Below are positions 28,700 through 35,200 of a DNA stretch of 64,000 bases, in pieces. The position numbers were made by a program, and so were the translations under genes. Source of the DNA: Lytechinus pictus (lineage: Eukaryota); NCBI RefSeq assembly GCF_037042905.1, contig NC_087251.1:10168001-10232000 (forward strand). Direction: 5' to 3'. The number at the start of each line of letters is the position of its first letter. The first letter of the stretch is position 1. The notes below the pieces were generated by a model. That model worked only from the letters and a program-made list of their open reading frames with translations. It did no database searches and was not told the origin of the DNA.

Positions 28700-30560
28700 T
28701 TTTTTTTTGTATTAAGTAGTTTTTATTGACAACTTCAATTCATACACAAAGTACAATATATATAACAAATAGAAGTTTGATGTCTTTACAAATTGATAAA
28801 TACCTTGACAACTCATAAATTTAACACCATTTTTTCCCTTAATGTTACAATAAAACACAATGTCAGACATCTTCCATTACATAATTGTAAATAACATTGA
28901 TGATGATAATATGCATTAAGAATAAACTTCTACAATAAATTCAACATATTGATTTTTTTTCAAGTGTCAAATATAAACATAAAAAAGTGATTTTCCAAGT
29001 ATACAAAAATCAATCTTTAATAAAACCTAAACGAATTGAAGCCATCAGCATTTTTTTTAACCCCATCGTCTCGGCCTCTTCACTCAAATAAATTCAATCT
29101 CAACAACAAACTCAGCCCTGGACCCTACCCCCCCCCCCCCGACCCTCCCTAAAACACCCCCATCCCCTATCCGGTGGAGAACTGGCTCTGGGCTCAAATT
29201 AATGGTCTAATGTTTAAGTTTTCCCATTTAGAGAAATGGATTGTAAGAGTCCCCCTCTTTGTTGCTAATTTCTTTTCTTCTCTTTGACCCCCCCCCCTAA
29301 TACTATTTTCTATTTAATTCTCGGTTTTTGTAAATAAGGTATTTAACTAAAATCAAGGCATGATTAATTAATTGATATTTACCTTTACTTCTCTCCTGCT
29401 TCCCGAAAAGAGTTTCCTGCCAACTAAATTTATTTATTTCAAAATTTAAACTTCTTGCACACAGATCCCAAAGTGATTTTGAAAATTCACAAGTATAAAA
29501 TAAATGTTCATACGTTTCTCCTTCCTTTTCACAAAATGAGCATAAATTGGTCGAAACAAGACCAAAACGGAAAAGGTGGTGGATAGTGTATATTATATTA
29601 TGCAAGAGTTTATACTGAAACTCCCTTAATCGACTATTTAGTGCGCAATATCTTAGTCTAAAAAATATACTTTCTATTTCCTTATTGGTAAATCATAATT
29701 CGTTCTAATTCTGTCGAAAATAAAAGGTTTAATTTCATTTTTATTCAACAGCTGTTCGTATATTTCTTTTGATTTTAAAAAACATTAAATTAGTTGTTTT
29801 CTTACCCAAATTGAAATCGATTCCAGAGTTATGTTTTGCATTTATTTCGATATTATTCTTCCAACTAACGGGTAAACAGGCATAAATATGCTTGATCTTT
29901 TAAACATCATTTGCATCTAAATTCAAATTAAGAAAATGTCTATCACATTTTAGTTTGCCATTATTATCCAAAATATGATGCAATTTATAAACCTCTTTAT
30001 CGTATAGAATCTTATCAAATATACAACTCCCTTTATATAGAATAAGCTTATTATTAAAAATCACCACTTTCCCAAACTCTGTACTTCTATTTACCCACTC
30101 TTCTAATAAGTCCATGTAAAACTTGGAAGCTGTTACTTTCAATAAACCTGGTATATAGTCACATGAAAATATAAAATCTCCACCCAAATGTTTGGTGGCA
30201 AAATTAAAGTAATGTTTCCATTTCATATCGTCATCTTTATTCAAATGTTTTTTAATCCACATTATTCGCTGTGCCTTTACCTGCACAGGGAAGTTTAACA
30301 TGTTTAATCCCCCTTGCTTATAGTCTAAAAACATTGTTTTCCTATTAATTTTGTCTTTCTTACCTTTCCATAAGAAATCAAAGTTAATTCATCCAATGAT
30401 TCATAAACCCATTAGGAACAGGAGTAAGAGACGCTCGATATAGAGGACTTTAGAATAGATATGCACCTTCAATAGTTGAATCTTCCCCATGAGCGTTATA
30501 TCCCTTAGCTTCCAAAAGTTCAAGAGTGTTTTAATTTTGCTTAAGATTTCTTTTTTTATT
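28700..30560 (-). mobile_element. 5'-truncated, frameshifted L1/Tx1-clade LINE (ORF2 C-terminus, 3' UTR, poly-A)
   Basis: Minus-strand pieces EILSKIKTLLNFWKLRDITLMGKIQLLK, FDFLWKGKKDKINRKTMFLDYKQGGLNM and SRLREFQYKLLHN...CSFCEKEGETYEHLFYTC (CCHC zinc-binding motif). AATAAA (28722-28727) then A9 (28700-28708). Possible TSD TTTTCAAT (28693-28700, 30560-30567), but low complexity. Confidence 0.92.
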
Positions 30561-31881: not shown

Positions 31882-32066
31882 ATTGTAAGACTGAAATTAA
31901 TATCACTTATTCAACAGAAAAGGAGGTGTATACATAAAATAACCCTCGTTGAATTTAGTATAGCAATAGCCTTAAAAGTGCAGTATTTCAACGCTCTCTG
32001 TATATTGAAAAAATGATTTAAAAAAAAATGATTAAAAATGTACATTGATTTCATATTTCATTTTCG

Positions 32067-32107
32067 TCACTTGATAAAGAGTTGCAGCGGCACTCGAAAG
32101 CTCGTGA
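32067..32107 (+). ncRNA. Minimal type I hammerhead ribozyme motif, U3-A8 variant (Penelope-like repeat remnant)
   Basis: Stem I TCAC(32067-70)/GTGA(32104-07); core TTGATAA (32071-77) plus one A; stem II GAG-t-TGC-agcg-GCA-CTC; GAAA (32096-99); palindromic AGCT stem III; predicted cleavage after UC (C32103). Activity not shown. Confidence 0.6.
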
Positions 32108-32113
32108 ACTTGT

Positions 32114-32200
32114 AAGCTAGTGAACACTTTTTGCGAGAGGGATCACGAATTTCCTAGAAAGCTAGTGAACAATTTTTGCGAGAGTATTCACGAATTTCCT
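32114..32200. repeat. Two-copy ~45-bp tandem repeat next to the hammerhead
   Basis: AAGCTAGTGAACA(C/A)TTTTTGCGAGAG...TCACGAATTTCCT occurs twice; the unit begins with a copy of the hammerhead 3' end. Confidence 0.85.
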
Positions 32201-35200
32201 TGTTGACCATAGTAGATTGCGAGACAAATTAATACCCTCTAGCGATTATTTCAGTCCGCAATAATGAACCTATTTAGTATGATTTCATATCTATTCAAAT
32301 AATGTTTAATGCTATCAACATATAACTTCTCTACAAACTTAGTTAATTGGGGTTAAATAGTTATCCTTACCTTCCCCACTGGGTGTAACCTTTGTGGTTA
32401 AACTACTTTTGTCACGGTCAAGTTCAGATGGGTCAACATGAGCTTTGTCATTAAAAATAATTGAGTTATTTCTCTCGGAAATATATTATGACGTGTTCTT
32501 TTTAAAATTCGGACGATTCGGATACGAAGGGGTAAAACGATGAGGAGAAAGGGAAAATGAAAATGAAATATACCAAAGTATGTTCCTTTCAAATTAGTTC
32601 TAACAAAATTTTGAATGCAGCTTCAGATATTTAGTGTCTCTTTTCTTTTCCAATTAAGTTAAAGAGAACAAAATGATTGGATCATGTATCCTATTGTCCA
32701 AATCGGAGATTTCATTATGCTGCCTGGTTATTAAAGGTGCATACTTTTGTAGATGTGAAGGTGACATCACAGTATACTATTTGAAGAAGTATATGCAGAT
32801 CGTAATTCATTTTAGACAAAAGTATGTCTAATAACATCGAACATAAAACATTCCATGAAATTCGTTGCAGACTGCAGAACTAACGATAGCGATGTAATCA
32901 GTCCTATACGTTACAGATTTCATGACTTGAAATACATCCAAATCGATTGTTGATAGCAACCAGTCGAACTCTGGATATAGATTCAACTCTTTAAGATTTA
33001 TTGAGTTTTAAAGCAAGAATATATAGGATTTTAATTCAAATCCAGTTTGAGACTAGTTAAAAGCATCCACAGTCGAATTTTGATTATTCAAATCTATACC
33101 AATATACATCTATGCCGTAACACAAACTTTAATAGAAATGGGCACATCCTCATAACTCTCCTTTAGATTTCCATAATTAGGGTAAGGGGGTTAAGTCAAT
33201 GACTTTCTCTTTTCCATCCTTTCCCTCCCTCTTTCTCTGGGCGTTAATTCTTGTGGTCAATCCCGGACAACACACCCTTGTTGACTTCAGGCTTCCTAAA
33301 GAGAATTCAAGAAAAGATTTCCACTGAGCGATTTTTTTTTTCCGGACGTGATTTTAAGAAGTCATTGACACGTGAAATTTCGTTCTTTTTAAGAAACAAA
33401 CTTGCAACCCCATTTATGCAAAGTCAGATATGGTCGTATTTCTTATTTTAGACACTTTTCTACATGGTAACTGACTTCACAATTTAGGGTTATGTTATGT
33501 TCTATGGCTAACAATAATACATAATGCAGAAAGTCATAGATCATATTTTGTTATAATACAGCACAATGGGATAGGTAACAGTTATCTACATCACATTGGA
33601 AACTCAAAGCTACAATTGCTACATAAGACAAAGGGCTGTGCCCGGTTATCATCAGACTAACAAGAATTTTCTAATATAATTATTATAAACACAAATCTCC
33701 TGAAAGCACAATATTTAATTACAGCATTACCTACAGCTGTTCAAATGTAGCTATGGTAACTGCAAATTTAACTGAAGATTTGTCACAATGTGAGATGGAG
33801 GGGGTGGAGGGGTGGGGCATGGGTGGGTGGTAACAACAAGAAAAAAGGGGGAAGTCGGATGCCGGGGAGTATAACCTTATCTCCTTATGCATGTAGCCAC
33901 ATTAAAGTAGAATGGAAAGGCAATCACAGTTTGTTAAACTTCCTGGGCGGAAGGGGGTGACTGAGAGGCCCTACTTTCATCTTGTTATCCCTCCCAAGTC
34001 GATACTAAACGTCAAAGCTTGCTCAGACTTCAGGGATTTTACAGATCACGTGATAGTTCCGCCATTATCAATGTCACATGTCAATGTCAACTCTGATGAC
34101 GGGTCTGTAGGGAGAAGAACTTTCTAAACAATAGAAAAGTTGGTTGCTTGGATTCATCTCCTCATCGACGGCAATCATCTCCGTCCCTCTTTCCTCTCCC
34201 TTTCCAAGTATTTCTGTGCTCAACGTGTTGTCTCTTGAATGTGTGTGTATATATGCAAACATGAACATTCGGGTACCTACTGACAAGATTGATGACACTG
34301 TTCAATTCTGGATTCTCTAGAATCTGGAACCATGCATAGACGAAATGACTAAGCAGTTAACAACATGAACGGGAGAAGAGGAGCTACGAAGGAGGTTCGA
34401 CAATTGTAATAAGCTTGCTACATGGAATAGCGAGATAGCTACAACTCTGAATACTTTTGAGTATTAATTCACATGGATACGCCAAGTGTTTGTGGGGATG
34501 AACTCCATGATTTAAGATTCACTGGTTACAATGACGGTTAGTAATGAAAACGTCTTCACTCCAAACCTGTAAGGATTGATCCTCAGGTGACTTAAGAAAA
34601 CATCCTCACATCTATTCTTCACACCTTAAGCACATATTCTTAGGCGTCGTATGTAAACACGGCTCAGTCATGGCGAGAACTTCACGACGTGTAAGATAAA
34701 ATCAATTAGAGTGAAGAAGTAACTTAAAAGTCTTTTATTTTCGGCTTAAGAAGTTACCAAGAAACTACTCCTCCCCATAACACTACTGAGTTTTCCTTCC
34801 TTTTTATACAAATAAAAATAATTACTTCACACCTAAAAAGTACACTCTATTATCAAGAGTAAACGTAAATACGTTTAAAACGATTAAAGAGTGAGAGTGT
34901 TAACAAATGTATCTCTTACTTTCTTCGTTTAAGTTGGACATGATTACCTCCAGTGTATTGGAACATTTATTTTCAAGTCACAGGTCTTAAGAAGCATGAT
35001 ACTGCATTTCAGTGTTGTGTGCTGAGACTTATGAGATGGATAATGTTAAATAAATGATGTGACTATCTGTTTTAATCATTGTGATATGGCAATTACAAGC
35101 GTAATCCATGCGTCGAAGTGAAATCTCAGCTTTGAATGAAACAGTTAACTGCCATTTGAATGACAGTTAGTCCTGCTCGTCATTTTGTTGATTTGCCGTC

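What the first reader, a model, noticed from the sequence alone, without database searches (positions are those of the whole stretch)
32067..32200. Orphan minimal hammerhead ribozyme (U3-A8) followed by repeats of its own 3' half
Seen: all core positions in order: TCAC-TTGATAA-A-GAGTTGCAGCGGCACTC-GAAA-GC-TC-GTGA. AAGCTAGTGAAC (32114) and GAAAGCTAGTGAAC (~32157) repeat the cleavage-side half with UA at the site. Known: C3-G8 can covary to U3-A8; minimal type I hammerheads with a palindromic stem III occur in Penelope-like element repeats and cleave as dimers. No Penelope ORF is nearby. Inference: relic of a Penelope or retrozyme-type element; the extra halves might serve as pairing partners or substrates. 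Stem I is only 4 bp, so it may be inactive.
Basis: partly seen in the sequence, partly recalled or inferred. Interest (0 to 1): 0.7.

Follow-up and report, generated by a model that had tools for sequence, protein, structure and literature searches.

The report
Penelope retrotransposon tail with minimal hammerhead
The motif is a real minimal hammerhead ribozyme of a kind already known from Penelope-like jumping genes, sitting in a 221-base dead-end copy of a very abundant, young sea-urchin element, so it is ordinary.

Summary

**Not an orphan.** Window 32060-32279 is a 5'-truncated insertion flanked by an 11-bp target-site duplication. It is the 3' end of a young Penelope-like element (PLE). 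The genome holds at least 505 copies of the 41-nt motif and 876 copies of the 3' end. Full copies elsewhere are partial tandems of a 2,867-bp unit with an 823-aa RT + GIY-YIG ORF. They also show head-to-head pairs and the optional 32-34-bp "tail".

**The motif is a PLE minimal hammerhead.** It meets every published trait of that class. Two sister PLE families carry it at the same place, with compensatory helix II changes and C3-G8/U3-A8 covariation. A covariance model built from 22 other families finds only this site in the window (30.7 bits).

**The repeated "3' halves".** They come from a 45-bp tandem duplication inside the pseudo-LTR.

**No evidence of cleavage in vivo.** None of 60 sampled copies starts at the cut site. 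Starts cluster 25-32 nt after a TATA box.

**Limits.** RNA reads could not be obtained. Earlier notes of this scan had already found PLE hammerheads elsewhere in this genome.

The parts
32046..32056 (.). Left target-site duplication TGATTTCATAT
   Evidence: Identical 11-mer at 32280-32290, read directly. Other copies also have TSDs of about 8-12 bp.
32057..32059 (+). Three extra bases (TTC) at the 5' junction, belonging neither to the element nor to the TSD
   Evidence: In full copies the element reads GATA before ATTTTCG.
32060..32248 (+). 5'-truncated 3' end of the Penelope-like element, part of the pseudo-LTR (unit positions 2679-2867), ending at the short RT start site ...CTAGCGATTA
   Evidence: 96.8% identical to L036 unit 2679-2867. 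876 genomic copies of the terminal 30-mer.
32067..32107 (+). Minimal type I hammerhead ribozyme, U3-A8 variant. The predicted cut is after C32103, and a partner is needed to form helix III.
   Evidence: 505 genomic copies with up to 2 mismatches, reversed-pattern control 0. Covariation with families A and B and 20 others.
32114..32200 (+). Two 45-bp tandem units. Each starts with a copy of the hammerhead's 3' half (AGCUA-GUGAAC) and holds a UUGCGAGAG box.
   Evidence: TRF result. The same repeats occur in both pseudo-LTRs of L036 and L039. Box tally.
32115..32123 (+). Box 1: AGCU + A + GUGA. It could pair with 32099-32102 and 32067-32070 to complete a monomeric hammerhead cutting after A32119 (speculative).
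   Evidence: Invariant in 53 copies. The alternative fold is -8.6 against -9.2 kcal/mol. Absent from family B.
32160..32168 (+). Box 2: AGCU + A + GUGA in this copy
   Evidence: AGCC in 30 and AGCU in 19 of 53 copies.
32219..32227 (+). GCGAGACAA box near the 3' end, shared with sister PLE families A and B
   Evidence: Seen in the downstream sequences of L046, L049 and L036.
32249..32279 (+). PLE 'tail': an optional extension that is the start of the next unit, including the ORF start codon at 32264-32266
   Evidence: Matches unit positions 1-32/36. Present at one end only of head-to-head pairs. Tail described in PMC11167929 and PMC8557442.
32280..32290 (.). Right target-site duplication TGATTTCATAT. 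The first T is ambiguous with the last base of the tail.

Best explanation
Window 32060-32279 is a dead-on-arrival, 5'-truncated retrocopy of a young, high-copy Penelope-like retrotransposon (PLE). It was inserted by target-primed reverse transcription and is flanked by an 11-bp target-site duplication.

The copy holds the part of the element's pseudo-LTR that lies between the probable transcription start and the reverse-transcription start sites. Near its 5' end, seven bases in, sits the element's minimal hammerhead ribozyme. This is the U3-A8 version of the PLE 'min-HHR' class: a 4-bp helix I, an unpaired A after A9, a long helix II that starts G-C, and no helix III, only the palindrome AGCU.

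By analogy with tested PLE motifs, such a motif can reach an active fold only when two copies pair through the palindrome (a double hammerhead), and even then it cleaves weakly. The repeated '3' halves' arose from a 45-bp tandem duplication that spans the ribozyme's 3' half and a GCGAGA box.

Shown here: the insertion anatomy, membership of the family, and covariation of the motif. Inferred: the catalytic mechanism. This solo copy has no promoter of its own, because the TATA box lies just upstream of the truncation point. It is most likely inert.
For: - Repeat family: 712 first-look candidates at about 97% identity, 505 copies of the motif and 876 copies of the 3' end.
- Retroelement: the ORF upstream on the same strand has RVT_1 (E 6e-8). 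It also has GIY-YIG, which passes Pfam's cut-off in sister family B (27.3 bits), is weaker in A, and scores 13.8 bits in this family. Two Cys lie between GVVY and YIG.
- PLE architecture: partial tandems of a 2,867-bp unit, head-to-head 5'-truncated pairs inside one TSD, and an optional 32-34-bp tail.
- Sister families A and B (60% aa identity) carry the motif at the same place. Helix II is fully compensated (GAGU/ACUC, GUUG/CAAC, GUCU/AGAC), the palindrome switches between AGCU and ACGU, and the core switches between C3-G8 and U3-A8.
- Across 22 other families, 88% of cells are paired against 62% in shuffles (0/500) and at most 45% when slid. Helix II is 98% paired.
- A model built without this family finds only this site in the window, at 30.7 bits.
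- Every trait matches the published description, including U3-A8 (PMC4209133).
Against: - No Rfam hammerhead model matches, even at E <= 10. This is expected for a motif with no helix III and an inserted base.
- There is no direct evidence of cleavage.
- None of 60 sampled copies begins at the cut site.
- Published PLE min-HHRs cleave poorly in vitro. In one PLE, cleavage was not needed for insertion and left no read ends (PMC4209133, PMC11167929).
- Copies within the family are 95-100% identical, so they say nothing about selection. The covariation evidence rests on between-family comparison, and those sequences were picked with a pattern that fixed the core, G10.1-C11.1 and A15.1-U16.1.
Confidence: 0.9

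Rival explanations
1. The motif is conserved in PLEs for a role other than self-cleavage. It might be a structured element at the 5' end of the pseudo-LTR transcript, or a site bound by the element's protein. In that case cleavage plays no part in the life cycle of this family.
For: No copy among 60 starts at the cut site. 9 of 60 start 0-9 nt upstream of helix I, which suggests that uncleaved RNA is the template. Published in vitro activity is low (PMC4209133). In Anolis PAc, cleavage was not needed for insertion and no reads ended at the site (PMC11167929).
Against: The catalytic core letters, the 3-8 covariation and H17 are kept across more than 20 families while the helices change freely. 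That is the signature of selection on the ribozyme fold itself. PLEs of fungi carry efficient monomeric hammerheads (PMC4209133).
Confidence: 0.25
2. A cis-completed monomeric hammerhead. Box 1 (32115-32123) pairs with the AGCU at 32099-32102 to give a 4-bp helix III, and with UCAC at 32067-32070 to give helix I. One RNA then folds into a full type I hammerhead that cuts after A32119, with no dimer needed.
For: All pairs can be drawn, and the fold is about as stable as the minimal one (-8.6 against -9.2 kcal/mol). Box 1 is invariant in 53 copies. A natural variant has the ribozyme fused directly to box 1 with A17.
Against: Sister family B has no second box, and family A has only an imperfect one. 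Other families show none that fits. The boxes are explained by a 45-bp tandem duplication. The copies are too young for invariance to mean selection. The predicted MFE structure is a different, non-catalytic fold at -14.2 kcal/mol. No copy starts at unit 2739 exactly.
Confidence: 0.07
3. A chance hammerhead look-alike inside the terminal inverted repeat of a MITE or DNA transposon with subterminal repeats. This was my own first reading.
For: Many copies lie in inverted pairs flanked by about 9-bp duplications.
Against: The 'arms' vary in length and continue into an RT + GIY-YIG ORF. Direct partial tandems exist. The motif covaries across PLE families.
Confidence: 0.01
4. A retrozyme: a non-autonomous tandem repeat that makes circular RNA through hammerhead cleavage and ligation.
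For: Animal retrozymes derive from PLE pseudo-LTRs according to the preprint 10.64898/2026.07.22.740005.
Against: The window copy is solo, TSD-flanked and 5'-truncated. The family's units are 2,867-bp coding units, not short tandem arrays. No short tandem arrays of the 221-bp piece were seen among about 100 loci.
Confidence: 0.02

Closest known systems
Minimal hammerhead ribozymes (min-HHR) of metazoan Penelope-like elements, including the U3-A8 variant of Schistosoma mansoni Cercyon (Cervera & de la Pena 2014, PMC4209133)
   Same: Location in the pseudo-LTR; type I topology; no helix III, only a palindrome at 15.2-16.2; an unpaired base between A9 and G10.1; G10.1-C11.1; a long helix II; a 4-bp helix I; U3-A8 in place of C3-G8; mostly solo truncated copies and nearby opposite-strand pairs.
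   Different: A different host (sea urchin, according to earlier scan notes) and its own helix sequences. In this family a 45-bp duplication repeats the 3' half of the motif downstream.
Poseidon PAc of Anolis carolinensis (PMC11167929)
   Same: Partial tandems, RT + GIY-YIG, two RT start sites 30-40 nt apart that give the optional 'tail', a hammerhead in the pseudo-LTR/ORF junction region, and no sign that cleaved RNA is the template.
   Different: In PAc the ORF starts inside the ribozyme. Here the ribozyme lies about 155 nt upstream of the ORF start and about 190 nt downstream of the previous stop. In sister families A and B the stop codon lies inside helix II.
Rfam Hammerhead_1 (RF00163) and other canonical hammerheads
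   Same: The same catalytic core and cleavage chemistry are expected.
   Different: No helix III hairpin, no loop-loop contacts, an inserted base and U3-A8. There is no match even at E <= 10.
Animal non-LTR retrozymes
   Same: Type I hammerheads with a weak, palindromic helix III, thought to derive from PLE pseudo-LTRs.
   Different: Retrozymes are short tandem arrays that yield circular RNA. This is a single truncated retrocopy.

Membership tests
PLE minimal hammerhead ribozyme (min-HHR) | Core boxes in type I order: N3-U4-G5-A6-N7-N8-A9, G12-A13-A14, A15.1/U16.1, H17 | tested here: met
   UUGAUAA at 32071-77, GAA at 32096-98, A32099/U32102, C32103.
PLE minimal hammerhead ribozyme (min-HHR) | Positions 3 and 8 form a Watson-Crick pair (C-G or the known U-A covariant) | tested here: met
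   U3-A8 here and in families B and D; C3-G8 in family A and 18 others. The count is circular for this pair, because the sequences were picked with that rule.
PLE minimal hammerhead ribozyme (min-HHR) | One unpaired base between A9 and G10.1, and a G10.1-C11.1 pair | tested here: met
   A32078; G32079-C32095. The same holds in all 22 other families, though the search pattern fixed it.
PLE minimal hammerhead ribozyme (min-HHR) | Long helix II supported by compensatory changes | tested here: met
   6 bp with one bulge. Across families helix II is 98% paired, with 3 of 4 pairs changed on both sides.
PLE minimal hammerhead ribozyme (min-HHR) | No helix III hairpin; palindromic 15.2-16.2 that allows a double hammerhead | tested here: met
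   AGCU at 32099-32102. It is AGCU or ACGU in all compared families.
PLE minimal hammerhead ribozyme (min-HHR) | Short helix I (2-5 bp) | tested here: met
   UCAC/GUGA, 4 bp. The inner two pairs are 86-95% paired across families, with changes on both sides.
PLE minimal hammerhead ribozyme (min-HHR) | Lies in the pseudo-LTR of a Penelope-like element | tested here: met
   Present in both direct repeats of L036 and L039, about 190 nt after the ORF stop and on the ORF strand.
PLE minimal hammerhead ribozyme (min-HHR) | Recognised by a structure-and-sequence model of the class | tested here: met
   Model R2, built from 22 other families, scores 30.7 bits with E about 1e-6. It is the only significant hit in 64 kb.
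PLE minimal hammerhead ribozyme (min-HHR) | Self-cleavage after H17, as a dimer | not testable with these tools
Indirect test: 0 of 60 copies start at the cut site.
Penelope-like element (canonical, C-terminal EN) | A single ORF with RT followed by GIY-YIG, with two Cys between GIY and YIG | tested here: met
   RVT_1 at E 6e-8. GIY-YIG scores 27.3 bits in family B, 17.2 in A and 13.8 in this family. GVVY-x-IPC-xx-C-xxx-YIGET is visible. The nearest Atlas clusters carry RVT_1 + GIY-YIG.
Penelope-like element (canonical, C-terminal EN) | Partial tandems forming pseudo-LTRs; adjacent inverted 5'-truncated copies; a 30-40-bp tail at one end; TSDs of variable length | tested here: met
   The features are defined in PMC8557442.
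Penelope-like element (canonical, C-terminal EN) | The RT groups with PLE/TERT RTs in a phylogeny; assignment to a clade (Penelope/Poseidon, Neptune, Nematis) | not tested
   No reference PLE set was at hand. The PDB sequence search gave no TERT hit.
Rfam hammerhead families (RF00163, RF00008 and others) | Reaches the family's gathering score | tested here: not met
   No hit at gathering score or at E <= 10 on 31900-32400.
Animal retrozyme | A short head-to-tail array of hammerhead-bearing units with no ORF | tested here: not met
   A solo TSD-flanked copy. The family unit is a 2,867-bp coding unit.
MITE / TIR DNA transposon | Fixed terminal inverted repeats and no reverse transcriptase | tested here: not met
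   The arms vary in length and run into an RT ORF.

The most novel reading that the evidence does not exclude
In this PLE family, the 45-bp duplication placed a second AGCU-A-GUGA box 12 nt after the minimal hammerhead. A single RNA could then form a 4-bp helix III in cis and act as a complete monomeric type I hammerhead, cutting after A32119. That would remove the need for a dimer that limits other PLE min-HHRs.
Probability: 0.07. Interest if true: 0.5.

Novelty: new member of a known kind. Interest (0 to 1): 0.2.

Why it matters
It matters little beyond annotation.

Three small points may be of use to people who study PLEs:
- This family gives a clean natural case of C3-G8/U3-A8 covariation between sister elements in one genome.
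- The 5' ends of genomic copies cluster at a probable pseudo-LTR transcription start and avoid the ribozyme cut site. This agrees with the published view that uncleaved RNA is the template.
- A duplication has placed a possible cis partner beside the ribozyme, which can be tested at the bench.

Tried and rejected
- **TIR/MITE reading.** I took this up, because copies lie in inverted pairs with about 9-bp duplications. I dropped it when the interior proved to be an RT ORF in a perfect 2,430-bp head-to-head palindrome.
- **Rfam.** Nothing at gathering score and no hammerhead at E <= 10. The weak snoRNA-like hits at 32246-32325 (minus strand) are below threshold and span the tail and the TSD, so I treat them as chance.
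- **First covariance model.** R1 and the first pair count used a structure two columns out of register. The slide control exposed the error. The corrected versions are.
- **Within-family covariation.** A search for diverged copies gave only one structural variant, because the low identities came from differences in repeat number.
- **PDB sequence search with the ORF.** No TERT or RT hit.
- **Bacterial-type promoter/terminator scan of the pseudo-LTR.** Nothing found, and it is not relevant to an animal element.
- **Large protein searches.** Not used, because the family scans sufficed.

Full report
**1. The observation**

- Helix I: UCAC 32067-32070 pairs with GUGA 32104-32107.
- Core: U3-U4-G5-A6-U7-A8-A9 at 32071-32077, followed by an unpaired A at 32078.
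- Helix II: 32079-32095, six pairs with one bulged U, and a first pair of G-C.
- 3' side: G12-A13-A14 at 32096-32098, A15.1-G-C-U16.1 at 32099-32102, and C17 at 32103.

The predicted cut after 32103 is therefore placed correctly. The two repeated 3' halves at 32114-32125 and 32157-32170 open two 45-bp tandem units.

No Rfam hammerhead model matches, at gathering score or at E <= 10 on 31900-32400. The motif is still not a chance match. A descriptor written for PLE-type minimal hammerheads hits once in the window and never in 200 simulated windows.

**2. What surrounds it**

The motif is not an orphan. A search of the window's own genome with 32040-32215 gave 712 first-look candidates, and the scored ones were about 97% identical. 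The 41-nt motif occurs 505 times with up to two mismatches, against 0 for the reversed control. The 3'-terminal 30-mer occurs 876 times.

Many copies lie in inverted pairs, and I first read them as the arms of a DNA transposon. That reading failed for three reasons.
- One pair (L031) is a perfect 2,430-bp head-to-head palindrome whose interior is an ORF with a reverse-transcriptase domain.
- Other loci (L036, L039, L042) hold direct partial tandems of a 2,867-bp unit with an 823-aa ORF.
- The ORF ends in a GIY-YIG nuclease with two cysteines between GVVY and YIG. The Pfam match passes the cut-off in sister family B and is weaker here.

Copies end either at ...CTAGCGATTA or 32-34 bp further on. 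The extension is simply the start of the next unit, including the ORF's ATG.

These are the published hallmarks of Penelope-like elements: partial tandems that form pseudo-LTRs, adjacent inverted 5'-truncated copies, a 30-40-bp tail at one end, TSDs of variable length, and a hammerhead in the pseudo-LTR (PMC8557442). The tail has been traced to two RT start sites (PMC11167929).

In the window, the copy covers unit positions 2679-2867 plus the tail (32060-32279). Three extra bases sit at the 5' junction, and the copy lies between 11-bp duplications, TGATTTCATAT at 32046-32056 and 32280-32290. No PLE coding sequence is in the window.

**3. Is the motif a real member of the PLE hammerhead class?**

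Elements at about 60% protein identity to this one fall into two sister families, and both carry a hammerhead at the same place after the ORF.

| Family | Core | Helix II | Palindrome |
|---|---|---|---|
| A (e.g. L046) | CUGACGA + A | GUCU...AGAC | ACGU, then C |
| B (L049, L050) | UCAC-UUGACAA + A | GUUG...CAAC | ACGU, then C-GUGA |
| This family | UUGAUAA + A | GAGU...ACUC | AGCU |

All three inner helix II pairs are compensated. The palindrome stays a palindrome. The 3-8 pair switches between C-G and U-A.

Pattern searches show at least 1,503 C3-G8 and 591 U3-A8 matches in the genome, against controls of 24 and 139. They fall into some twenty consensus families. On an alignment of 22 such families that excludes this one:
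- 88% of cells pair, against 62% in shuffles (0 of 500 reach it) and at most 45% when the partners are slid.
- Helix II is 98% paired.
- The two inner helix I pairs are 86-95% paired, with many double changes.

One caveat applies. The pattern fixed the core, G10.1-C11.1 and A15.1-U16.1, so only helix I and the inner helix II pairs are independent evidence.

A covariance model from that alignment finds the candidate as the only significant hit in the 64-kb window: 30.7 bits, E about 1e-6, next best 14.2 bits.

Every feature listed by Cervera and de la Pena for metazoan PLE min-HHRs is present (PMC4209133):
- a short helix I of 4-5 bp;
- a long helix II;
- a base between A9 and G10.1;
- the G10.1-C11.1 pair;
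- a palindromic 15.2-16.2;
- the U3-A8 covariant;
- mostly solo copies, and nearby opposite-strand pairs.

**4. How it most likely works**

Shown: the stretch is a truncated retrocopy.

Inferred from the literature: the ribozyme needs a second copy to build helix III through the AGCU palindrome, and it cleaves weakly even then (PMC4209133).

I looked for a genomic trace of cleavage by mapping the 5' ends of 60 copies, taken in contig order from the 3'-end pattern hits.
- None starts at unit 2723, the first base after C17.
- Nine start at unit 2677-2686, which is 25-32 nt after a TATAAATA box and 0-9 nt before helix I. The window copy (2679) belongs to this group.
- The junctions are sharp.

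This suggests that the pseudo-LTR promoter starts transcription just before the ribozyme, and that uncleaved RNA is what gets copied. The same was reported for Anolis PAc (PMC11167929). The window copy lacks the TATA box, so it could be transcribed only by read-through.

**5. The repeated 3' halves**

The 45-bp units run from an AGCUA-GUGAAC box to a UUGCGAGAG box. They resemble the stretch from the ribozyme's 3' half to the conserved GCGAGACAA box near the 3' end, a box that families A and B also have. I take this to be a tandem duplication.

Box 1 is AGCU-A in all 53 copies examined. Box 2 is AGCC in 30 copies and AGCU in 19. One natural variant has the ribozyme joined directly to box 1, with A17 and a single unit.

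On paper, box 1 can supply helix III and helix I in cis, which would give a complete monomeric hammerhead that cuts after A32119. The computed energy is close to that of the minimal fold, at -8.6 against -9.2 kcal/mol. A different non-catalytic fold is more stable, at -14.2 kcal/mol. Family B has no such box and family A has only an imperfect one. I give this idea about 7%.

**6. Verdict**

This is a known kind of element and a known kind of ribozyme, in a family that may not have been described by name. Earlier notes of this scan had already reported Penelope-type minimal hammerheads, and head-to-head fragments of them, elsewhere in this genome. I reused from them only the host name (sea urchin). 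Interest is low.

Noticed in passing
L036:3716-3750 (unit 2654-2686); window 32060-32067: A TATAAATA box lies 25-32 nt upstream of a cluster of copy 5' ends: 9 of 60 sampled copies, plus the window copy and L004. The pseudo-LTR transcript therefore probably starts 0-9 nt before helix I of the ribozyme.
   Followed up: partly
L014:1235-1445 (minus strand; G000:C2:55655479-55655558): A variant copy in which the hammerhead is joined directly to box 1, giving A17 instead of C17. Only one 45-bp unit is present. It is either the ancestral form or a deletion between the repeated boxes.
   Followed up: partly
L046:3350-3363, L049:3358-3361: In sister families A and B the ORF runs into the hammerhead and its stop codon lies in helix II. 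In the window's family the ORF ends about 190 nt upstream of the ribozyme.
   Followed up: no
L056:45-88, L057:45-88: A third U3-A8 family (helix II GUCCAC...GUGGAC, palindrome AGCU) whose helix I seems to have only 1-2 pairs. Its parent element was not looked for.
   Followed up: no
L059:90-125, L069, L068: Some C3-G8 families are followed about 10 nt later by a stem-loop of the form GGUCCUUUUUAGGACC-A-ACA. It resembles a histone mRNA 3'-end signal, as earlier notes of this scan reported.
   Followed up: no
L031:1027-5902: A perfect (100%) 2,430-bp head-to-head palindrome of the element, with a 16-nt spacer. It is either a very recent insertion or an assembly effect.
   Followed up: no
window 29303-29605 (minus strand): A 100-aa ORF with a zf-RVT domain (E 2e-8). 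It is a fragment of a different, non-Penelope retroelement, 2.5 kb upstream.
   Followed up: no
window 32246-32325 (minus strand): Weak C/D-box snoRNA-like matches (snoR22 at 24.6 bits, snoU43 at 21.6 bits, E 0.5-0.7, far below gathering). They span the PLE tail, the TSD and the flank, so they are most likely chance.
   Followed up: no
L036:4216-4971: A minisatellite of 23-bp units (ATGGTCATGTGAC...) lies next to a full-length copy of the element. It is unrelated to the element itself.
   Followed up: no
L002, L003, L007, L014, L015, L017, L018, L126: Eight copies at about 95% identity all lose similarity to L036 at unit 2597. This may be a subfamily with a different upstream part, or a preferred 5' end.
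   Followed up: no
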